A stretch of 64,000 bases of DNA from Corallochytrium limacisporum Hawaii (GCA_002811645.1 PDIP01000048.1:67407-131406); one strand, 5' to 3'. Shown: positions 2,029 through 64,000, numbered from the stretch's first letter. Notes: generated by a model from the sequence alone, not told the origin. Numbers and translations: made by a program.

Positions 2029-2724
2029 CTAGTTTGTCATGCGCAGATACCATGCATACGCCCGATCTTTGGCCGCCTCGAACGAATCTAGAGCTGGCCT
2101 GACATCGATCTCAATGAATGAATTAGTCTCATCATTCTTGTCCCCGATGCTATAGTAGTCGATGATATAGCGCACGTCTTTGCCACATCTGTCGATGGTC
2201 CAGTCGTGGCGATCAAAGGGAAGCTCATAGCCCAGCCAGCTGCGCATACGGGCCCGGGGACTGAACTCTGTAGCCTTACCCTGAAATTTCTTAAGCATAG
2301 GCATTCGACATTGGTCTGCATGAAGAGCCTCCCATTTAAGAACTTCCCGCCAAGCGTACTCGTTGTTTGCATTGTGGACACGGATAACTTCGGTCATATC
2401 CTCACGAACCATCTCCGGGTTGTCCTCGTGCTTCCATCCCTTACGACGCATGGCATTGTAGAACATTTGCTCACTGGGGTAGATCCAGGGCTTTCCACCT
2501 TCACTAGCCCTTGGAATCGACGAAGTGATGCGCTCTGTGCTCAGCTCAAAGGGCTGTCCTTCAGCCGGCTGTTGGGCAGGATTCTTTGGCATCTGATTCT
2601 GCGGATCAAGGCCAGTGTCCCCCTCGGTCTTCTTAGGCCCGGGCATAGGCTCACGACCAAAGGTCATAGCGGCCTTGTCCCGCTGAGCATCACGGCTCAC
2701 CTCGCTGCTAGCGGAATTTCCCAT
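2029..2724 (-). CDS. HCCS: Holocytochrome c synthase (cytochrome c heme lyase)
   Basis: Family motifs [57 protein letters not shown] and DVRPALDS. Confidence 0.97.
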
Positions 2725-4664
2725 CCTGCTTCTGATTGTTAGTTTAGCGTGGCTTGTTGACCAAGCGGGGAGTAAACAATACGTAATCGCACAATTCCGT
2801 TTTCACGGAACGAAAACCCAAATGAGACATAACGTTCTCGATAAGATCCTTAGAGCCAGGGTACCATATACCAAATCATTCTCATCATGACTGTGCAACA
2901 ACATTCGCAAAGATAGTATTCTGCACAATATGCCGACCACCTCCTCCAAGCACTTAAGCCGCACCCGGCAAGCAAATGGTAACAATTCTCCTCCACCAGG
3001 GGCAGCAAACCTGCTGATTCGTCACATGCCCTAGATTTCTTGGATTTCGAACAGAAAGTAAATAGCGGAGAACCTTTTTCTTTTTTTGTGGCCGGCGGCT
3101 TGCGCTTGTTAGAAAGAAGAAAGTGCGGGAAAGTGCCCAGGGGGAGGAGAAGGGGGGGGGGACGTGAGGGGCCCGCCAGAAAGGGGAGACTCAAACGGAG
3201 AACTGAGAGTGAGAGACATGGGAAAGAAACTATGACCCGGGCCGCCGTGGTGTGGGGAGGGGGGGGCCCTCAGAGTAAGTGGCACTTGCCATCAGAAAAT
3301 GAGGGGGCAACCAGGGGAGAGAGCCACATGGGTGCCAAAAGGTCTTTGTCCCAGTTGACGGAGCAAGAGATTTTTGGGGGAAAACGAACCGCAATTTCTG
3401 GTGAGAACTTGCAATTACAATAACCACCGTCAAGCTCAATACATCCCACAAGTATGACAAATGGGAGACAACACACGCGTTTTTTGGTCACCCGACAGAG
3501 CCACCATAGCCACGGGTGAGGATATGCGAACCTGCCCGTCGTGCGACCGCGCTCCCCTCCGCAGGTGTCGGTTTGGCCAAGCGGCCACACTAGGTGGCCC
3601 GCTAGTCTTTTGTTTCTTGCTGCCTCCCGCCGTTGGGGGTGCGTAGCAATAGAAATTGATACCCCCCTGCAGCGAATGGGACGCATTTTGGCAGTGAGCA
3701 GCAGCAGCCCTTCTTCTGCTCTCTCCACCACCTTTTCCCGTCTCCACCACGGACGGCCAACCGGCCCATGTGCCACACGCGGTGCTGGTCGCTCCGTACG
3801 AGAGAAAAAACACACACACCTACACACACGGCCAGCCCTTTGTCCCGACACATTGGACATGGAAAAAGAGCGCGAGAATAATGGAAAACGACGGGCCAAA
3901 AACCAAGTGGTCCGAGTGCAGAAGGGAAGGAAATGATTGGGATGGGGGGAGAGAGAGAGAGAGCCTTCTAATCAAAGTTCCCCAGCCGTCGCGCTGTGTT
4001 CCTATGCTGGCGCTATGTGTGGCTTCCAGAGGCGGACGGACGTGCCACAGTGGAGGCAAGAGTGGAACACGGGGGGAGGGGAGAGGGACAAAATGGCGGT
4101 GATCGCAAGGACAAGGGGAGAGGGGGACCGAAATTGGCGTCCGTTCTCCTTTTGCGACTGTGCCCCCCTCCCCCCCCCCCGGGGCCCCCGTGTTACTACC
4201 GCACACATTACGTGTGGGGGAAACACCGGCTCTGCCAGGGAGGGGAAGGAGAAACGGAGGACAGGACCAGTCCGTTAGCCTTTGTTTTACCACCAATGGG
4301 AATTCAATGAAGGCCGAAGCTAGTGGGTCACAGGGGCTTTTCCAAGCAGCTACTGCCCCCATTTGGCAGGAAAAAGGAAGAGGATGCGGTTCAGGACCCC
4401 AAGAGGAGAGTTCGCTGTGTCTGGGGAAAAGGGTAGAGAATTGTGATGGAATGTTTAATGGGTCCCCCCTTAGGCCGGGAAGAGTGGGATCGTGTGTCTA
4501 AAGTCTACTATGTAATGATATGCTAATATGTGTTTGATTGTCCATGAGGTAGACACCCTCATTACCGTCTTGCAGGCAGTGACGTTGAAAGCTTCATCTC
4601 CTTACCTTTTGAAGGGGTGGTAAGTGTGTATGCGCAATTTGCTCTAGTGTTAGGTTAGGTTATG

Positions 4665-51142: not shown

Positions 51143-51384
51143 NNNNNNNNNNNNNNNNNNNNNNNNNNNNNNNNNNNNNNNNNNNNNNNNNNNNNNNNNN
51201 NNNNNNNNNNNNNNNNNNNNNNNNNNNNNNNNNNNNNNNNNNNNNNNNNNNNNNNNNNNNNNNNNNNNNNNNNNNNNNNNNNNNNNNNNNNNNNNNNNNN
51301 NNNNNNNNNNNNNNNNNNNNNNNNNNNNNNNNNNNNNNNNNNNNNNNNNNNNNNNNNNNNNNNNNNNNNNNNNNNNNNNNNNNN
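51143..51384. other. Assembly gap (N run) flanked by poly-C tracts
   Basis: 242 N bases. Confidence 0.99.
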
Positions 51385-55159: not shown

Positions 55160-55385
55160 NNNNNNNNNNNNNNNNNNNNNNNNNNNNNNNNNNNNNNNNN
55201 NNNNNNNNNNNNNNNNNNNNNNNNNNNNNNNNNNNNNNNNNNNNNNNNNNNNNNNNNNNNNNNNNNNNNNNNNNNNNNNNNNNNNNNNNNNNNNNNNNNN
55301 NNNNNNNNNNNNNNNNNNNNNNNNNNNNNNNNNNNNNNNNNNNNNNNNNNNNNNNNNNNNNNNNNNNNNNNNNNNNNNNNNNNNN
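55160..55385. other. Assembly gap (N run) flanked by poly-G tracts
   Basis: 226 N bases. Confidence 0.99.
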
Positions 55386-55807
55386 GTGGGGGGGAAAGGG
55401 GGGTCTGGGGGCTAAGGAAAAGGACCAGTGGCTCGCTTCTCGTTGACATGTCCCAGAGCCCGGTCTGTATGCCCCATCCAAGATCCCACATCCCAGTCGA
55501 AACATTTCCCATACAGGATGTGAAGGGATATCATGACTTTTTCAGGTAAGGTTCCATTGTCCCATGAAGTTGGTTACTGGACCCTTGTGGTGCAGGAACA
55601 CTCGGGATCTGTGAAAGTGGCTTTGCGGGGCTCCGAGATGATAGGATGACCGGTAAGTGAAGAAGATGAAGAAGGTGCCGCGCCCTGGCTTACTACTATT
55701 TCAAGTATCCTACACTCAATCACTAAGAAAATGATCTTTTGGTTGCTGTGAATAGAACAAAACAATATAGAACAAAGCATAGTTCAGCTAGTAGGAGGCA
55801 GAAAGGT

Positions 55808-56659
55808 ATGCCCCCGCAGACACGGTTAACAAACGAGTTCTCCGAAACTGGCGGCATGAGAGAGACACAGACTTCCACAGATAAGAAAATCACGGGAATA
55901 GGGAAGAAGTTTGCGAGAAAATTGTCCTCTGCGATGTCAAAAGCACCCGAAAACAATGGAGCAGGAACACGCCGTGGTTCCATAGTCTCAGAATCTGAGG
56001 CCTCCTGGACTCCTCGTTCGTTTTCTAATGACTCCGGTGACACGGTTAGCAATTTGTCCCTTGCGTCATCAGGGAGCTCGTCCAGCATTGCTTTTCTAGA
56101 ACATTTTAAGGGTCGTAAGATTAATGGACGCTGCAACAGCCCTCGACTACGCCGCACTAGTTCTCCTGTGGAATCTTTCAACACGAGCGACATAAGACGG
56201 ATGTCTGAGCCTGTCAGACAGACTGCTGTCAAGCCAACTCTTCAGGCTGCTGGTAAGCCTCACTTAAGGACTGTTTTCCATTCAAGGATCATGTACGCCA
56301 TGGTTAGCATGTCCACAGAGACGAGTAAGGTAGAGCGTTGGGCTCTGAAGAATGAGAAAACTGAAGTTGTCAATGGCAAGGAGATCGCACATATCCGGTT
56401 CCGCGCCGGTGAAGCCATTTTCCGAGTTCCCTGCGAAGTTCATGAGTCTTTGGAGGCCGAAGTTATCCTTGGATTTGACTTCCTTGTAACTCAAGGAAAG
56501 ACCCATGGCATTCGTACAGCGTCCACCAAGCAGATCGTCATGCGGGACAACAAGAAGCCTCTGGCACTAATGCCCTACACGCGGAAATCTTCCATGAAAA
56601 GGGTTTCTTTTAATCGTACCGTTCAGGTCATGTCGATGCCGGAAATCCCTGTACAGTAA
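55808..56659 (+). CDS. Orphan protein: Ser-rich disordered N-terminal half, retropepsin-like domain lacking the catalytic Asp, C-terminal RVxF motif
   Basis: Intact 283-aa ORF from ATG 55808. YAMVSMSTETSKV ... EVILGFDFL resembles the retropepsin xALVDSGAxxS ... ILGxDFL pattern. It ends KSSMKRVSFNRTVQV. Confidence 0.65.
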   Translation: MPPQTRLTNEFSETGGMRETQTSTDKKITGIGKKFARKLSSAMSKAPENNGAGTRRGSIVSESEASWTPRSFSNDSGDTVSNLSLASSGSSSSIAFLEHFKGRKINGRCNSPRLRRTSSPVESFNTSDIRRMSEPVRQTAVKPTLQAAGKPHLRTVFHSRIMYAMVSMSTETSKVERWALKNEKTEVVNGKEIAHIRFRAGEAIFRVPCEVHESLEAEVILGFDFLVTQGKTHGIRTASTKQIVMRDNKKPLALMPYTRKSSMKRVSFNRTVQVMSMPEIPVQ

Positions 56660-56863
56660 TTTGAACACATCAGCAACACACATACCACATAACATACAAT
56701 ACTCATATTTCATCCTAGTTCAGGAGTGCGCCCCATGATATGGCACACCTATCATCATCATCATTATCCTCCATACACTACTAGCAATAACGCGTGAACT
56801 GATATTACGTACTTTCGCATCTGGGCTGCGTACATTTCTCTGATTCAATACTCATCAGTGGGT

Positions 56864-57788
56864 CTACAGGCCCCAAACCCGGAGTTTACCATCTCTGGAG
56901 CCGGAAATCCAGCGATCACCAATCACGCGACACAAGCTGTTTACACCTTCGGCATGTCCATTCATGTCACAGATCTTGTCCTGCGTTGGCACATTGTAGG
57001 CTACAATACTACCGTCATCCAGCCATAACAACACAGCCACTGCGATCAAACCTCACACAGTTGATCACGTGTGGTCCACAGTCGGGGCTGCTAATCTCTG
57101 CACCCATTCGCACAGCCCAGGCACACACTACTCCATCCGCATCAGATGATACAACGGAGTCTCCGCGCAGGCTGAAATCCACACTCGTGTACGCGTTCAG
57201 GTGACCGTGCAGGGTGTGCGCGAAGAGACCAGTGCGGACATCCCAGAGGGAAACGGTCTTGTCTGCACTGGCCGTGCATGCCACCGGGGTGTAGGGCTGA
57301 AAACACGCAGCGTTAACAGCGTCGGCGTGGCCACGAAGTGTGGTCCGACTGACCTGATACTGCAGGTCCCAAATCTTCGCAGTCTGATCCATGGAACCCG
57401 AAATCAGGGAGTCCCCTCCGACCAGGTGGGATACGCTCCACACAGCACCAGCGTGCTCTGTGAGAGTGTGCAGGCGCTGGGACTTTAGATACGACCGGAT
57501 CTTGATCTGACAATCACCGCTACCGGTCACCAACAAAGGCTTTGAGGGGTTGAAGTCAGCTGTGGCGATCCAGTCACGGTGGCCCTTACCGCTCGTTATC
57601 AATTCACCGCTATTGATGCTCCACATACTCCACAAAACGTTGTCACTAGCGCTAACAGCTACTACCTTGGTCGGATGGGAAGCCACCGTCGAAATGGGGA
57701 GTTTGTGAGTTGTATAGTTAGTTTGGCTTCCCTGCGGAAGTGCCTTTCGTGAATGCCAACCCGTGTCCGTTCGGAACCATGCTCCCAT
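56864..57788 (-). pseudogene. SPAG16: PF20/SPAG16 flagellar central-apparatus WD40 protein; frameshifted near 57020 and lacking the N-terminal coiled-coil half
   Basis: HPTK...SD..W.MW...G.LI..G.GHRDWIA..DF.P, LRGHADAVN...QPY, TASADKTVSLWDVRTGL, GHLN, SSDADGVV..W..RM.AE and FDRSG follow the PF20 repeats in order. The last repeat (DDGSIVAY...GHAEGVN...SGSRDGKLRVW) is in another frame (56864-57049). Confidence 0.8.
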
Positions 57789-60700
57789 GGACTTCCTGTA
57801 CGAATTCTAGCCTCCCTGCCGTCCCCAAACCCACATCCCCCTTCCCAACTCGCACTCTGGGGTGCGCGCGACCAAACGCCGTCCTTCGTTGGGTGCCTGC
57901 AATAGGGCAATGAAAAATAGGCCCCAGATTGAAGTCCACGAAGGGTGCACTCGATCCTGGTGATTTAAATAAGTAATATCATTCCATTGTTTAAAAAGTA
58001 AAGATGAGACTAAATTACAGGTATCCGGATATGGAAAATATGACCCGTATTCGGCCGCGTCAGTTCTCCCGGTGTATGGACTGCTCAATAGTGAGAGTAC
58101 CGAGGGGAATGTTGGGGAGCGACACCAGGAATAGTTTGTATACAAAACCGGGCTAAATTTTCTAGAGACAGAACCACGATTGGTTTCCGGCCACACAGGT
58201 ACAACTAAGAGTTCTATTCCATAGCCACCATCGCACTGCACCGCACTGCCATGCTCAAAGATGGATGTTGTGTTCTGTGCAATGGATACCTCCACACAGT
58301 ACAAAGACCCCGGTCGATAATGATTTTGATGCCGGAGTGAATTGATACGGGGCGGTATGGTGCCAAATCTCTTAGGATGTCGAGGGCAAAGGGAAACAAA
58401 AGAGGAGGTCCCAAACTCGTCCGGTACCAAACCAAGCCAAAAGAGGGGCTTGAGCGTGGCCGGAGGAAGCGGGTTTTCCGCTGAATTAGAGAGCATTCAT
58501 TTCGTTTCCGAACCCAACCGAACCCAACCGAAAATAAACCTGGCGCTAGTATATATCTATGGTAGTCAATGCTGGAGTGCTGCTGCCTCTTGAACGAATA
58601 TTTGTACGTAGGGTGTGTATGGGATAGGGAGCAAGAATTCCACTGTGCAACGACCACACACGAATCTATTCTAAGAGCATACAACATCTGCTTACCGCCT
58701 ACTGTCCACACTTCATCACATGGCGCGAAAAGTGAAAATAATGGTGGTCTCCTACTAGGGCACAGTTGTGACCCTCGACTTAATGCCGGTCTGGAAATGG
58801 AGACGCAGGGCTGTGAGCGGGGGTGTGGGGAGATCCTTGTGTGGTGGAGAGACCGGTGGGATGAGATGGCCCAATGTCGTACATTCCTGGCCGTGTTCCT
58901 CGAGCCTTGTTCGACGTTGCGTGCCCCTCGGTGCACATGGATGGGGACCAGTTGTTGAATAGTCAATGCATGGGGAAATGCAAAGAGCTGTGTGCGTATG
59001 AATCCAAGGCGCACAGTGTTTGGTCGTGACAACGCACCAAGTTTTCTTGTTGCACTACACGAGGTCCCAAACCCAACAAATCGTCCTATAAAATGGCAGC
59101 AGTGCATTTGTCCATTCAATCGCCGTGCGCTTGAGGAGCACCTTGGTTTTGCGTTTCAGCTTCCAAAGGAACCGAACTGGGAAACTCACTGCACAGATAG
59201 GTGACACGTATGCTTATGGCCGCGCGAAAAACCAAGTATGTTGTGAACTGTGCGCATGCTCAAACTCATAGCTTCTTTCGATTGACACGTCAATGCTCGC
59301 CCGCGAATCCAAATGGGCCCAATTATTACTCTGCTCTCGAGTGTGACCTTCTGCATTTTCCCATCATCTAGTTTGAATCCCCCACAGATCCCCCCTTCTC
59401 CTCAGAGAACCTCAAACGGCGCTGGCTATTGTTTATGTGTTGAGTGGTATGGTGTGCGGGTACCTCGCGTTATCCTTGTAGCGGGAGACCATGTGCCCTT
59501 GCGCTCAGGACTGCTCCACAATTGCTTTCCATACTCACGGAACTGAGACCGAAGGAAGAGGGGGGGGTGGGCGCCCGGTGAATTAAAGAGGTTCAAAAGC
59601 TAAAGCTTGCACAGCGAACGAACTTTCAGAACCAACTCCGGTCGTCCTTCTCGCCTGCTTTGCATCCCTCCTTCATTATTTCTTCACGTCTGTTTCCTTC
59701 TTTACCCCTTTCCCTATTAGCACGGGGGACAACTAGGGAACTGAAAATGAGCCAACCTAAACTTCATACTTTGCGTATGGCCAGGACAGGACCATCGGAC
59801 TCTCTGCAGACTTTGGTGATTGGATTATACCCTAATTAGTGCTGAACGGGTGTTGGGGAAATAGCAGGGATACACACTAGGAACCCCTTTACTGCACTCG
59901 TACTCCTTCTTTCTTCGTGTTCCTTCCTCAAGTGCTTCAGTTTTCTGAGCTCTGGTCCTCTCCGTGCACGGGAACTGGCCACCCTGGCCTCCCACTCTTT
60001 CATTACGCGACTAATTCCTTCCGACACTCATACCGCAAGTCAACCGACCGGCCGGTAATTTAGCGTTCCCCGCCACTGTTGATGACGTCGGAAATTTCTT
60101 TTCTCCATCGGGCGCATTCGCGTACACTATCGGTCCATGCCCTCCGTTTCAGCCCTATCCACCGCACAATTCCTGCTCCTAAGTGTTTGTCCACTGTGGA
60201 AAAATGGAGCAACTGGGTATGGACGCCATTGTCATCTATGTGTGGATCCATCGACGGCGTTGGCATTGGGAAGTTACTAGAGGGTGCCCATGAAGGTGAT
60301 GATTACTATTGTTGATTTCCCGATGGATAACACACTCTGACTGTCCAAAGCACTTTGTTCAACCGGAGACAATCACGGATTTGGTTGTGTTGTCTGGGAC
60401 GTCTACCGGTGTGCCTGGAACGATGATGTGCGAAAGAATTGGGCTGCAGCGCAAAATTCTGCGCCTCAGTCTGCAGTTGACATTCCTCGAATAGGCATCG
60501 TTCCCGGTGCGGAGAGTGTCAGTGTTGTCGGCGTGTCGCTTAGCTGCTAGGTGAGAGCCCCACCTTTCGGCAGTGTAAGAATCGGTCTGTCTCGATACTG
60601 TGCCAGCCTGTGCTGTTCCTTAAGTTTTGGTTGCAAAGCAGCGAGCTGGCGGAAGAGCCCGGGGTACAGTCATCAATGATGAATGGATAGGTTGGTGCAG

Positions 60701-63171
60701 CGGGTATCTGGCCACGAGGGAGTACGGATATGTCGCTTGAGCGATAGGGGCGGTACATGTACCCATATCGTATCTGGCGTTGTGATTTGCGAACTGTGCG
60801 TCGATGGCTCGTGTTGGTGCTTGGTATTCGGTCCGTTTGATTTGTGATCGATGTCGTAGTAGTGAAGGGTCAACATTCACATTTGAAACCAACGAGTCGA
60901 TTTGCTCATTTGGTGGACCTACTTGGGCTCACCAAGCGCTCTTAAATCAACAAGTATATTGTTTCAGCCCACTTGTGTTGTGTGGTGAGCACGTCCAGCG
61001 CTGCTTAATGTGAGAGTCTCCAAATGAATGCGCTGTTTGGTTGGTTGGTGGATTGCGAGAGCACGTCTGTGGTATAGGTATGCATCTCTCCCCATTGAGC
61101 CAGTCTATTCCTGTCAGTTCACCGTCATCACTCTGCTGGACCTTCTGCATGTCCCGCTGCATTGGTACTTTCCCATGGTCCCTCGAAGATCCAAGTCCTT
61201 TCTGGTATATGAAATATGCGGCAAAGGATAGTGTTGTTTGAGGTAGTACTGAAGCAGGAGACATGGAGGGAACAGACAAGCAAGAGAACAAGAAGGAGGC
61301 GCCCATTGCGATGGCACAGACAAGCACTCGGGCTCGTCACTGTTGAAAGAAGTCGAAGATTGGGGCTGAGCCGTGCGGAAGAAGGTCAGCCACCGCACGG
61401 GACGAGACAAAAAGACATGAAATGGTGCTGTACTGAAATAACCCAAGCATTCAACTTTGCATCACTGTGTATCGCAAAAGTTGACCGTATGACGTGGTTA
61501 TACGTTGAGAACGGGTGAATGCCTGTTTTTTTTTCCTTCCTTGTGGTTTTATGCCAGTACCACAGATACTAAAACTATCTATCTGTTTAGATCCAGAAAA
61601 ATGAGCAAAAGGCCGACGAAGGGGCCCTTTTGCTGTCAAGATTTGGCAATTCTTGTCCATCAAATGAGCAGATAAATTAGTAGTCAATGAACCGGTCGTT
61701 CAGTCCGACCCCCTTTCAACCCCCTCACTTCGCTCCGTGTCTTATTCCATTCCCCGGTTTTCATCGATAAAGCACCTTAACCCGTGTAGGGAACGTGTCG
61801 CCATTGATCGAACACAGAGTGTGGCAGAAAGATGACTTACTTTCAGTACCGCGAACATCAGGGAACGCGAAAAGTAGTGAGAACGCGAAAGGAAGAAGAA
61901 CCAAAGCCCCGGGCCCCGAAGAACCGAGATGGCCCTTATGTCCCCGGAGGACTGCAAATGGAGATGAGAGTTGTTTCCATAGTGTATGAACTCAGATCCT
62001 TCCGAAAGGCCTGAGCTATACGCGCGTCCTTTCTCTCGTCCTCTTTACCTTTACGTCCCAATACTTTCTGTAGGGAACCAGGAACAATTCCTTCCGACGG
62101 ACTTTGAGACTGTGTGGGCTGAAAGTGGGAGACCCGGAGCACATAAACCGCTGGGGCGCTGCGATCGCGAATACTGCCGTACGAATTAGTAAAAGTGGGG
62201 TACAGCTATGTGACTGAAACGTCAGCAATAGATCCACTTACAAACAAGGCGTGAAGAAATTTTCGTTGGACGGAACACTAGGAACAAGATGTACAGCCGG
62301 GAGATGGATGAAGAAAAAATCGTGTTGTGCCCCACTCTCTTTCTACCTGTCAGTTTCTTCGACTCACTACTGCACGATTCTGTCACTATTTAAAGGGGAG
62401 GGGGGGGGTCCCACAAAATACAACCTCACGCCGGGATGCTAAACCACACCCAAATGGGCTCCGCAGGCGCCGACATGTGAAATATAAAGGTATCAAAATT
62501 TTCTTCATACTGTTGAGTATAGAAATTCGTTTGTGGAGCCATCTCGAGACCTATATTCGAATCCCAGGCGTTCAGCAACCGCATGGGACACCGATTTGAT
62601 GCACACACCGTTCCGGAGAACAAAAGAGATGTGGAGATGGGTCCTCGTCTTTCTTGGTACTATGAGTATCCGATCTCACCCCCTTTACACACACCTCATA
62701 ATCTGGTCTAATCTCCCGATTTCCTTATATTTGCATTTAATAGCTTCGCCTATCAATCGTATCCCTCATATTCGGCGGTCTTATCCTTCACCCCAGCGCT
62801 AAGAACTGTTGCTCTTCCTTCTCTCCTTCCTGTGCTCCGTGTTTCGCCATCGTAGGCTCTTTGCCTTCTTTGGCTATAGCCCTGTCACCACTACCATTTC
62901 AAGCCGTAGTACTGAACGTTCCCCGAGGTTCCCTTTCCCCTCCTTCCATCTTGCACCTCTGGCACGGGCTGCGCGGGCTCGGCTCCGAGGTTGAACGATT
63001 TACGTTCTGACAGTGGGAACACTTTATGTATTGAATATAGAGAAGACAATTCTTGGCTAGCCAAGGAGGTGTGACGAGGTGATCCTACTGTGTGGAGAGG
63101 TCCGGCCACTTTGTGGCTTGTCTGATGTGACGAAGTCCTGCGAAGGAAAAAAAGAAGGGGAGGAGGCGAGG

Positions 63172-63259
63172 AGGGGGAGGGAGGAGAGAGAGAGAGAGGG
63201 AGAGAGAGAGAGGGAGAGAGAGAGGGAGAGAGAGAGAGGGAGAGAGAGGGAAGGAGAGA
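63172..63259. repeat. (GA)n / GAGG purine-rich microsatellite
   Basis: Imperfect GA run seen directly. Confidence 0.9.
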
Positions 63260-64000
63260 ACGTGAGCACTTTCTCCTTCTCTCACACGAGCGTAGCTCGC
63301 CGACGACTACATCGGAGTCCATATAGTTAGTACTAATAAATAAATGCTCATGGAAGGAACGCTTATGGCAATGTTTGGGAGGAACAGAAGAAAAGCTCTG
63401 AGAAATATGGCTTTGTCTGCGGAAAAATTTGTTCTCTCTTCGTCGCCCCAGTGCCTGTCCCTTTCACGCTCCCGTGTTTCGGCCCCGCCGAAGTCGCAGT
63501 CTCTGAGCAGCAAGGTGCGAATGGAATTCTCTTGGAATCACTCTAAGTCTTGCAGAAAGGGAGGTCAGAAATATATGAATTGCGCAACCTACCACACCAC
63601 CTTTCAGACCCTCAATCCTTTCAACACAGGGGATGAAGTTTTATAGGTCTCTTCGAAACAAGCATAGTCTCTTTGGTACGTATTGACTCAATTAATGAGA
63701 CCCTATCACAGTATATAAGATCCCGGAGAAAGCGTATGAGCATGTGCCGCCCCTCTGACCACCCAGCCGCATTGGGGGCTGAAGTTCACCAGAGCTCTTG
63801 CCGAACACCGAGCAACGGCCGCCCACAGAGATAGAGATAGACAAGCAGCAAAGACGGTTGAGATAGGCAGAGATTTTGCCATTTAGAATTTCGACCGTCG
63901 TCAGACATTATTCCTTTCGAGCTTCCTTCACTCTCCGGCCTCGTCTCCTTTCCGTGTCCTGCGTTTCTCCGCCGCCCGCCCCTCCCCCTCTCCCCCCCCC

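What the first reader, a model, noticed from the sequence alone, without database searches (positions are those of the whole stretch)
56864..57788. Flagellar central-pair gene PF20/SPAG16 apparently caught in the act of pseudogenisation
Seen: the WD40 repeats match PF20 order, but the frame breaks at ...GTT ATG GCT G|GAT GAC GGT (minus strand, ~57020), giving a premature TGA with the last repeat in another frame. Conserved WD residues are eroded (IKIRSY for IKIWDF, AWAVR for LWDxR, VSHL for xWH), and I find no N-terminal coiled-coil half upstream. Known: PF20/SPAG16 is specific to motile 9+2 axonemes, and Corallochytrium has no observed flagellum yet was reported to retain flagellar genes. Inference: a molecular fossil of recent loss of flagellar motility, which would argue against a cryptic motile stage.
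Basis: partly seen in the sequence, partly recalled or inferred. Interest (0 to 1): 0.8.

Follow-up and report, generated by a model that had tools for sequence, protein, structure and literature searches.

The report
Broken PF20/SPAG16 flagellar gene relic
This is the only copy of the flagellar central-pair gene PF20/SPAG16 in Corallochytrium limacisporum; it has lost its front half, carries a frame break and gave no transcript, which, with other dead flagellar genes in this genome, argues against the hidden swimming stage proposed in the literature.

Summary
On the minus strand, 57788-57018 and 57019-56867 encode the C-terminal WD40 propeller of PF20/SPAG16. The two parts are colinear with 105 orthologues at 42-51% identity, and the match is reciprocal-best in the 24.1-Mb genome. 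An orphan G at 57020 shifts the frame, giving TGA at 57017-57015. The last blade stays open in the +1 frame and ends at the orthologous C-terminus.

An independent contig of the source reads (depth about 178) reproduces the break. The conserved N-terminal half is absent from the 6.2 kb upstream, which runs to the contig end, and gave no match in the assembly. A transcriptome assembly holds the convergent neighbour but nothing from this locus. Eleven of 63 near-invariant residues are changed (orthologues: at most 3). Codon periodicity and GC3 are kept and there is no in-frame stop, so inactivation looks recent.

Genome context agrees. There is one intact dynein heavy chain, at least four axonemal dynein fragments and an IFT46 fragment. 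RSP3, RSP4/6, the hydin ADK domain and tektin gave no match. GAS8 and PACRG are intact.

Best reading: a unitary pseudogene left by flagellum decay (confidence 0.8). This scan has already noted the same decay pattern on other DNA of this genome. I found no paper describing it.

The parts
57018..57788 (-). Open frame A (257 aa): blades 1 to about 6 of the PF20/SPAG16 WD40 propeller. Homology to orthologues starts at about aa 8-25 (about 57767-57716).
   Evidence: It is 42-51% identical and colinear with residues of about 290-525 in orthologues of about 580 aa. Frame-specific codon signal is present and GC3 is 61%.
57015..57017 (-). Premature TGA that ends frame A
57020..57020 (-). Frame break: an orphan G between GCT (57023-57021) and GAT (57019-57017). 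Orthologues have 7 residues between FDRSG and DDG; here there are 5 codons plus 1 nt, a net loss of 5 (or 2) nt.
   Evidence: The X1 Logan contig (7373 bp, depth 178) reproduces it with 0 differences and 0 gaps.
56867..57019 (-). Frame B (51 codons, +1 frame): the last WD40 blade and the C-terminus, which ends one residue past the orthologous C-terminus
   Evidence: (WD40 27 bits). Identity to orthologues is 26% against 44% among orthologues. No stop occurs in 51 codons.
56864..56866 (-). Original stop codon (TAG) of the gene, still at the orthologous position
57807..57809 (-). In-frame TAG six codons upstream of the first ATG of frame A. It marks the 5' truncation boundary, and no homology lies upstream of it.
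57810..64000 (.). 6.2 kb upstream flank running to the end of contig C229. It has no assembly gap and no trace of the N-terminal half. The first 4 kb (57790-61790) was searched and is unique. The two long ORFs here (57810-58496 and 58217-59119, minus strand) lack a coding signal.
   Evidence: N runs only at 51143-51384 and 55160-55385; contig length 131406; GC1=GC2=GC3 of about 50%, no frame-specific codon signal.
55756..56793 (+). Convergent neighbouring gene (ORF 55739-56659). It is present as a 1038-bp transcriptome contig that stops 70 bp short of the relic's stop codon, and serves as an internal expression control.
   Evidence: X3 contig at depth 101, with nothing laid on 56864-57788.

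Best explanation
The locus is a unitary pseudogene: the only remaining piece of the PF20/SPAG16 gene of Corallochytrium limacisporum.

Shown:
- The 3' half, which encodes the seven-blade WD40 propeller, survives. The 5' half, which encodes the conserved N-terminal region, is absent from the 6.2 kb upstream and gave no match in the assembly.
- An indel whose length is not a multiple of three (orphan G at 57020) cuts the reading frame before the last blade.
- The locus is missing from a transcriptome assembly in which the abutting gene is well represented.

Inferred:
- The 5' half was removed by a deletion or rearrangement, not by decay in place. The surviving half is still 42-51% identical to orthologues, so a half decayed in place would still be detectable.
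- The WD half drifted under relaxed or altered constraint while its frame was kept, and was frame-shifted only recently.
- No functional product is made. A 257-aa product would lack the closing blade of the propeller. It would also lack the N-terminal half, which every one of the 105 full-length orthologues carries.

The relic is one of several left by the dismantling of the flagellar apparatus in this lineage.
For: Orthology:
- The best single-stretch structure hits are PF20 and SPAG16.
- Database hits include proteins named SPAG16.
- The alignment with 105 full-length orthologues is colinear.
- The match is reciprocal-best: orthologue P0216 hits this locus at 253 bits and 50% identity, and the next locus at 147 bits. 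The best own-genome paralogue reaches only 28-32%.

Lesions:
- The frame break and TGA are in the sequence.
- An independently built contig of the source reads shows the same sequence at depth 178.
- The N-terminal half is absent.
- The upstream long ORFs have no coding signal and no Pfam match, and the 4 kb searched (57790-61790) is unique.

Expression:
- X3 holds the neighbour at depth 101 and nothing from the relic.
- No gene model of 141-450 aa for this locus appeared in the protein collection. The same collection does hold this organism's GAS8 model, Clim_evm17s201.

Relaxed constraint:
- 11 of 63 near-invariant columns are changed, against a maximum of 3 in any orthologue.
- Median identity to orthologues is 42%, against 60% among orthologues. 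The branch length is at least 1.36, against a maximum of 0.575.

Context:
- One intact dynein heavy chain.
- Axonemal dynein relics: DNAH5-type with a frame break at DNAH5 residues 4519/4520, DNAH2-type, and two more.
- An IFT46 C-terminal fragment only.
- No match for RSP3, RSP4/6, hydin ADK, tektin, BBS1 or IFT43.
Against: - Apart from the single break, the reading frame is clean: no in-frame stop in 287 homologous codons. Codon periodicity and GC3 (61%) look like those of a live gene. A product expressed in an unsampled life stage is therefore not excluded.
- Absence from assembled transcriptome contigs does not prove silence.
- All DNA evidence comes from one strain and sample. The contig ends 6.2 kb upstream, so an N-terminal exon in unassembled DNA cannot be formally excluded.
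- The genome-wide Pfam absences had no positive control in another eukaryote.
- GAS8 (60-63% identical to animal DRC4) and PACRG are intact, and p28 gives a strong match without stops.
Confidence: 0.8

Rival explanations
1. The locus is still a working gene for a WD40-only protein, comparable to the SPAG16S isoform of mammals. It would have a non-axonemal role. It would either be made as the 257-aa truncated product or be frame-shifted only in this cultured strain.
For: The frame has been kept through a large amount of divergence. A neutral simulation gives P(no stop) of 0.13 to 0.024 for the observed excess divergence. The codon signal is frame-specific and GC3 is 61%. An ATG lies 21 codons before the homology. 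Mouse Spag16 makes a 35-kDa WD-only nuclear isoform (PMC3105110).
Against: No transcript contig is present although the abutting gene has one. The frame break removes the last blade. From established knowledge of WD40 propellers, that blade is needed to close the propeller. Eleven of 63 near-invariant residues are changed. The lesion pattern, a 3' remnant with a frame break, matches the DNAH5-type relic, which cannot be functional.
Confidence: 0.13
2. The frame break is a sequencing or assembly error, or one allele of a heterozygous site, and the real gene has an intact 3' half.
For: The published assembly is short-read and scaffolded, with N gaps in the window. Contigs drop rare variants (note).
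Against: An independent Logan assembly of the reads gives the identical sequence over 5.9 kb at word depth of about 178, with no gaps. Both source runs hold all sampled words. The site has no homopolymer longer than 2. An intact 3' half would still leave the gene without its 5' half.
Confidence: 0.04
3. The ORF belongs to a non-flagellar WD40 family and only resembles PF20 through generic WD40 similarity.
For: Generic WD40 proteins give high summed scores.
Against: Those high scores are sums over many overlapping repeat matches. The only long single-stretch, end-to-end colinear matches are PF20 and SPAG16. Identity is 42-51% to 105 orthologues, against 28-37% to any other WD40 locus in the genome. 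The C-terminus coincides with that of the orthologues.
Confidence: 0.02

Closest known systems
Chlamydomonas PF20 / mammalian SPAG16L (central-pair C2 protein of 9+2 axonemes)
   Same: The C-terminal WD40 propeller is colinear blade by blade, at 42-51% identity. The match is reciprocal-best and the stop codon sits at the orthologous position.
   Different: The conserved N-terminal half of about 290 aa is missing. The frame is broken before the last blade. Eleven of 63 near-invariant residues are changed. No transcript was found. No intact axonemal dynein heavy chain was found, and the radial-spoke families and the hydin ADK domain gave no match.
SPAG16S, the 35-kDa WD-only isoform of mouse Spag16 (PMC3105110)
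   Same: It covers the same part of the protein, the C-terminal WD repeats alone.
   Different: SPAG16S is made from an internal promoter of an intact gene and has an intact frame. Here the 5' half is absent from the DNA and the frame is broken.
Reduced flagellar toolkit of sanchytrid fungi with a non-motile pseudocilium (PMC8371127)
   Same: An opisthokont lineage that has lost its axonemal dyneins and many other flagellar components while keeping others.
   Different: That paper reports the losses as absences and the organisms still build a visible pseudocilium. Here recognisable gene fragments remain and no flagellum has been observed.
DNAH5-type outer-arm dynein relic in the same genome (G000:C180:104865-105570)
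   Same: The anatomy is the same: only the 3' end of the gene survives, with one frame break and the original C-terminus and stop retained. GC3 is still high.
   Different: It is a different gene family. It is much closer to its orthologues (161 bits over 99 aa to human DNAH5) than the PF20 relic is to its own.

Membership tests
PF20/SPAG16 | C-terminal seven-blade WD40 propeller that is colinear with orthologues and reciprocal-best | tested here: met
   253 bits and 50% identity to orthologue P0216 residues 292-526; the next genome locus scores 147 bits.
PF20/SPAG16 | Conserved N-terminal half of about 290 aa, including the invariant ERD.H.MH.R..QEK motif | tested here: not met
   A profile of 105 sequences finds nothing in the six-frame window. 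A profile of 34 sequences finds nothing in the assembly. None of the full-length orthologue's matches reaches its residues 1-253. Caveat: the contig ends 6.2 kb upstream.
PF20/SPAG16 | Continuous reading frame through all blades | tested here: not met
   Orphan G at 57020 and TGA at 57017-57015. The same sequence appears in an independent contig of the reads.
PF20/SPAG16 | Retention of family-wide near-invariant residues | tested here: not met
   11 of 63 columns that are at least 98% conserved are changed; the 105 orthologues average 0.35 with a maximum of 3. The orthologue set was chosen as the best hits to one query, so very divergent orthologues may be missing.
PF20/SPAG16 | Co-occurrence with the motile 9+2 apparatus (axonemal dyneins, radial spokes, other central-pair proteins) | tested here: not met
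   One intact dynein heavy chain only. No RSP3, RSP4/6 or hydin ADK. No positive control in another eukaryote. SPAG6/PF16 and PF6 were not tested.
PF20/SPAG16 | Localisation to the C2 central microtubule and requirement for central-pair assembly | not testable with these tools
   Needs microscopy or genetics.
Unitary pseudogene | Single locus with no intact paralogue elsewhere in the genome | tested here: met
Unitary pseudogene | Disabling lesions present in the DNA itself rather than in the assembly only | tested here: met
   X1 contig with 0 differences; X1 and X2 hold all sampled words. Source strain only.
Unitary pseudogene | No transcription or translation | tested here: inconclusive
   Absent from one transcriptome contig set in which the neighbour has depth 101. 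Raw RNA reads could not be examined.
Unitary pseudogene | Relaxed selective constraint | tested here: inconclusive
   The rate is strongly raised, but the frame was kept through most of the divergence. dN/dS was not computable without a close relative. The GAS8 control was invalid.

The most novel reading that the evidence does not exclude
Corallochytrium limacisporum has no flagellated stage at all. Its published 'flagellar toolkit' is partly a fossil record. Genes for the motors (outer- and inner-arm dynein heavy chains), the central pair (PF20) and IFT-B (IFT46) survive only as young 3'-end fragments. A minority of 'flagellar' genes (GAS8/DRC4, PACRG) stay intact and conserved, and p28 and a SPEF1-like gene also give strong matches without stops. 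These survivors would therefore have functions outside the axoneme. The lineage would then be a natural experiment for separating ciliary from non-ciliary roles of these proteins and for dating a flagellum loss close to the animal stem.
Probability: 0.55. Interest if true: 0.7.

Novelty: new member of a known kind. Interest (0 to 1): 0.6.

Why it matters
Corallochytrium is one of the few unicellular relatives of animals. Since 2015 it has been cited as having a cryptic flagellated stage on the strength of gene presence alone (PMC7147346 and PMC12731214, both citing Torruella et al. 2015).

The PF20/SPAG16 locus shows that at least one such 'present' gene is a truncated, frame-broken, apparently silent fragment. 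The other relics I found suggest this is general. Presence/absence tables built from similarity searches can therefore overstate a toolkit, which affects reconstructions of when flagella were lost among holozoans.

The question also becomes directly testable, by strain resequencing, stage-resolved RNA-seq and electron microscopy. The finding also points to conserved survivors such as GAS8 and PACRG as candidates for non-ciliary functions.

Tried and rejected
- Exhaustive representative search with the 257-aa ORF. The top 150 were giant multi-WD40 proteins that add up repeat scores, so it was useless for orthology. I obtained full-length orthologues by searching with a 423-aa partial orthologue instead.
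- Micro-intron at the break. Restoring the frame needs removal of 3k+1 nt. No GT..AG of that length exists that would not also delete the conserved residues just before the DDG motif. Rejected.
- TGA read-through. A TAG follows two codons later in that frame. Rejected.
- Upstream long ORFs (57810-58496, which is in the same frame as ORF A, and 58217-59119) as a novel N-terminal extension. They have no Pfam match, no codon periodicity, and GC1=GC2=GC3 of about 50%. Rejected as chance ORFs.
- Transposon insertion as the cause of the truncation. The 4 kb searched upstream (57790-61790) is single-copy and has no Pfam domains. No support.
- GAS8 as a control for lineage-wide fast evolution. The hits were almost all animals, so the conserved-column statistic is not comparable (17.7% 'violations'). 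Only the plain 60-63% identity to animal DRC4 is used.
- Second-strain evidence. The metagenome and other-organism contigs (X5, X6) cover 58344-58604 and 56390-56609 only, not the break. The exact-product look-up found nothing.
The ORF there gave no Pfam match at E<=0.01.
- Torruella et al. 2015 is not in the held library.

Full report
WHAT IS THERE. On the minus strand, 57788..57018 is an open frame of 257 codons ending in TGA at 57017-57015. A second open frame of 51 homologous codons, 57019..56867, follows in the +1 frame and ends at TAG 56866-56864. Both pieces contain WD40 repeats. Generic WD40 proteins and designed propellers get high summed scores against solved structures. The only long, single-stretch, end-to-end matches are Chlamydomonas PF20 (7n61_0A, 217 bits, our aa 24-254 against PF20 321-551 of 606) and SPAG16 (9ijj_Q, 181 bits). 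The organism is Corallochytrium limacisporum: an intact GAS8 gene of the same assembly is 100% identical to the EukProt model Clim_evm17s201. The assembly has 24.1 Mb in 286 contigs.

ORTHOLOGY.
- A word search returned proteins 41-47% identical over at least 90% of the query, some named sperm-associated antigen 16.
- Searching with one of them gave more than 100 full-length orthologues of about 580 aa from across eukaryotes, including Andalucia Pf20 and Klebsormidium, Guillardia, Polarella and Tetraparma SPAG16.
- Our frame A aligns colinearly with residues of about 290-525 of all 105, at 42-51% identity.
- Frame B aligns with their last blade and ends one residue past their C-terminus.
- In the reverse direction, orthologue P0216 finds this locus as its best match in the genome (253 bits, 50%). 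The next locus scores 147 bits and 37%.
- The best own-genome paralogue of our ORF is 28-32% identical.
So this is the single PF20/SPAG16 locus of the genome.

THE BREAK. Orthologues have seven residues between the conserved FDRSG and DDG motifs. Here there are five codons, an orphan G at 57020, and then GAT GAC GGT. That is a net loss of 5 nt, or of 2 nt after an earlier in-frame loss. The site has no homopolymer. No GT..AG interval of length 3k+1 could restore the frame without deleting conserved residues. Reading through the TGA only reaches a TAG two codons on.

A Logan contig built independently from the public reads of the source sample (7373 bp, word depth about 178) lies on 55434-61300 with no difference and no gap. 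Both source runs hold all sampled 31-mers of 56400-59400. The break is therefore in the DNA of that strain, as far as contigs can show. No second strain could be examined: the metagenome and other-organism contigs that share words lie at 58344-58604 and 56390-56609.

THE MISSING HALF. The N-terminal 290 aa of the family is well conserved; 20 columns are invariant in 34 sequences, including an ERD.H.MH.R..QEK motif.
- A profile built from 105 sequences and searched with all filters off against every open stretch of the six frames of the window gave nothing better than E 6.7. Nothing appeared on the minus strand upstream of the relic.
- A profile of 34 sequences gave no candidate in the whole assembly.
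- As an internal positive control, full-length P0216 gave 100 matches in the genome, and none reaches its residues 1-253.
- Homology stops about 8-25 codons into frame A. An in-frame TAG lies at 57809-57807.
- The first 4 kb upstream is single-copy and has no Pfam domain.
- The two long ORFs there have no frame-specific codon signal, with GC1=GC2=GC3 of about 50%.
- There is no assembly gap upstream; the N runs are at 51143-51384 and 55160-55385.
- The contig ends at window position 64000. A distant exon in unassembled DNA therefore cannot be formally excluded. I infer it is unlikely: the few multi-piece genes I saw in this genome have their pieces tens of bases apart.

EXPRESSION. Run X3 is a set of 10,617 contigs totalling 13.5 Mb. 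Its one contig here begins and ends at the boundaries of the neighbouring ORF, so it behaves as a transcriptome. It holds a 1038-bp contig on 55756-56793 (ORF 55739-56659, depth 101) and nothing on 56864-57788. That contig differs from the genome at two places, so it may come from a slightly different strain. Contigs show presence, not absence, so this is suggestive only. No gene model of 141-450 aa for the relic appeared in the protein collection, although that collection contains this organism's proteome.

RATE AND TIMING.
- At alignment columns at least 98% conserved in the 105 orthologues, the relic deviates at 11 of 63 (orthologues: mean 0.35, maximum 3). At 95% or more it deviates at 15 of 73 (mean 0.92, maximum 5).
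- Median identity is 42% to orthologues, against 60% among orthologues (minimum 47.6%). In a FastTree tree the branch to the relic is at least 1.36 substitutions per site, against a maximum terminal branch of 0.575.
- Yet there is no in-frame stop in 287 homologous codons and only one frame-breaking indel.
- Simulated neutral substitution that produces 17% to 29% amino-acid change leaves the frame stop-free in only 13% to 2.4% of trials.
- The relic keeps a frame-specific codon signal and GC3 of 61% (frame A), against about 50% in the flanks.
- The last blade is only slightly more degraded than the others: identity ratio 0.59, against 0.61-0.85.
My reading, which is an inference: the WD half evolved quickly but as coding sequence for a long time, under relaxed or altered constraint and perhaps after losing its 5' half. 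The frame break is recent. The attempted control with GAS8 failed because its hits were nearly all animals. I use only the plain fact that GAS8 is 60-63% identical to animal DRC4, so the lineage is not generally fast-evolving.

GENOME CONTEXT (own survey with Pfam families, six-frame, no eukaryotic positive control).
- Six dynein heavy-chain families find one complete gene, C184 with a 4907-aa ORF.
- They also find fragments. At C180:104865-105570 lie the last 200 or so codons of a DNAH5-type outer-arm chain, in two frames that meet at human DNAH5 residues 4519/4520 (161.5 and 118.5 bits).
- At C261:50670-51260 a 197-aa open frame matches DNAH2 residues 1256-1372, beside a RAD51/DMC1-like gene.
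- At C285 there are Dynein_C pieces in several frames with stops. At C228 there is a very divergent 262-aa Dynein_C ORF.
- IFT46 survives only as its C-terminal third, behind an ETF-beta-like gene.
- RSP4/6, RSP3, hydin ADK, tektin, BBS1 and IFT43 gave no match.
- GAS8 and PACRG are intact ORFs. p28, a CH_2/SPEF1-like gene and two CFA20-domain genes match strongly without stops.
- IFT57 lies in two frames 46 nt apart, which is unresolved.
The PF20 relic is thus one of several 3'-end remnants of flagellar genes.

COMPARISON AND NOVELTY. The locus descends from PF20/SPAG16 but fails the family's defining features of an N-terminal half, a continuous frame and a motile-axoneme context. It is a relic of the family, not a working member. 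It covers the same part of the protein as mouse SPAG16S (PMC3105110), but that isoform comes from an intact gene. Gene decay after loss of a flagellum is a known kind of event; sanchytrid fungi are a described parallel (PMC8371127). In the held library I found no paper that describes flagellar pseudogenes in Corallochytrium. Recent papers still cite a cryptic flagellated stage (PMC7147346, PMC12731214). PMC12731214 itself found only a 32-aa TPPP fragment in this species. After forming my reading I found that this scan has already noted the same decay pattern on other DNA of this genome. Those are unchecked AI notes and are not counted as evidence. My dynein survey independently agrees with them.

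PROCEDURE. Database and structure-sequence searches used the two pieces separately, by reference. For the local alignment, tree and column statistics the two pieces were joined with an X at the break. For the neutral stop-codon simulation I joined the two in-frame coding pieces directly in a local script (aa 22-257 of frame A plus frame B), leaving out the orphan G. That is a real-letter join made only to count stops; it was not printed, saved or sent to any tool.

Noticed in passing
G000:C180:104865-105570 (L012:2366-3071, minus strand): The last 200 or so codons of a DNAH5-type outer-arm dynein heavy chain lie in two open frames (133 and 109 aa). The frames meet at human DNAH5 residues 4519/4520 (161.5 and 118.5 bits), and nothing of the motor lies upstream. 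The anatomy matches the PF20 relic. GC3 is 62-65%.
   Followed up: partly
G000:C261:50670-51260 (L008:4171-4761, minus strand): A 197-aa open frame whose aa 5-115 match DNAH2 (inner-arm I1 beta) residues 1256-1372 (E 5e-16). It lies just downstream of a RAD51/DMC1-like gene. The rest of the 4400-aa gene is gone.
   Followed up: partly
G000:C285:52129-52650 (L014:2130-2651) and G000:C228:5201-5950 (L013:2202-2951): Two further Dynein_C fragments. The C285 one is split over at least three frames with stops. The C228 one is a very divergent 262-aa ORF (53 bits).
   Followed up: partly
G000:C88:255259-255492 (L015: about 2700-3050): Only the C-terminal third of IFT46 (profile positions 134-211 of 211, 82 bits) remains. 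It lies behind an ETF-beta-like gene, with stops in all frames upstream.
   Followed up: partly
G000:C143:188816-189830 (L016:1017-2031, minus strand): The two halves of IFT57 lie in different frames 46 nt apart, with no obvious GT..AG. This is either a very short intron or a frameshift.
   Followed up: no
G000:C233:67514-68980 (L009:1515-2981); G000:C250:130109-130756 (L011:1610-2257); G000:C231:108020-108448 and 127149-127436: GAS8/DRC4 (488 aa, 60-63% identical to animal orthologues) and PACRG (215 aa) are intact ORFs. The inner-arm light chain p28 and a CH_2/SPEF1-like gene match strongly without stops. All this is in a genome without any intact axonemal dynein heavy chain, so these genes are candidates for non-axonemal roles.
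   Followed up: partly
window 55898 and 56263: The transcriptome contig of the neighbouring gene differs from the genome at two places (A>C and C>T). It may come from another strain, or these may be allelic or editing differences.
   Followed up: no
window 57810-58496 and 58217-59119 (minus strand): Two unusually long ORFs (229 and 301 aa) overlap in the flank upstream of the relic. They have no Pfam match and no codon periodicity. I treat them as chance ORFs, but their length is unusual for DNA of about 50% GC.
   Followed up: partly
window 58344-58604 and 56390-56609: A marine metagenome (X5, 2 differences in 261 bp) and a run labelled as another organism (X6, identical over 220 bp) hold short contigs of this locus. 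Corallochytrium or a near-identical strain therefore occurs in those samples.
   Followed up: no
window 55739-56659 (plus strand): The transcribed neighbouring ORF (306 aa), noted earlier as retropepsin-like, gave no Pfam match at E<=0.01.
   Followed up: partly
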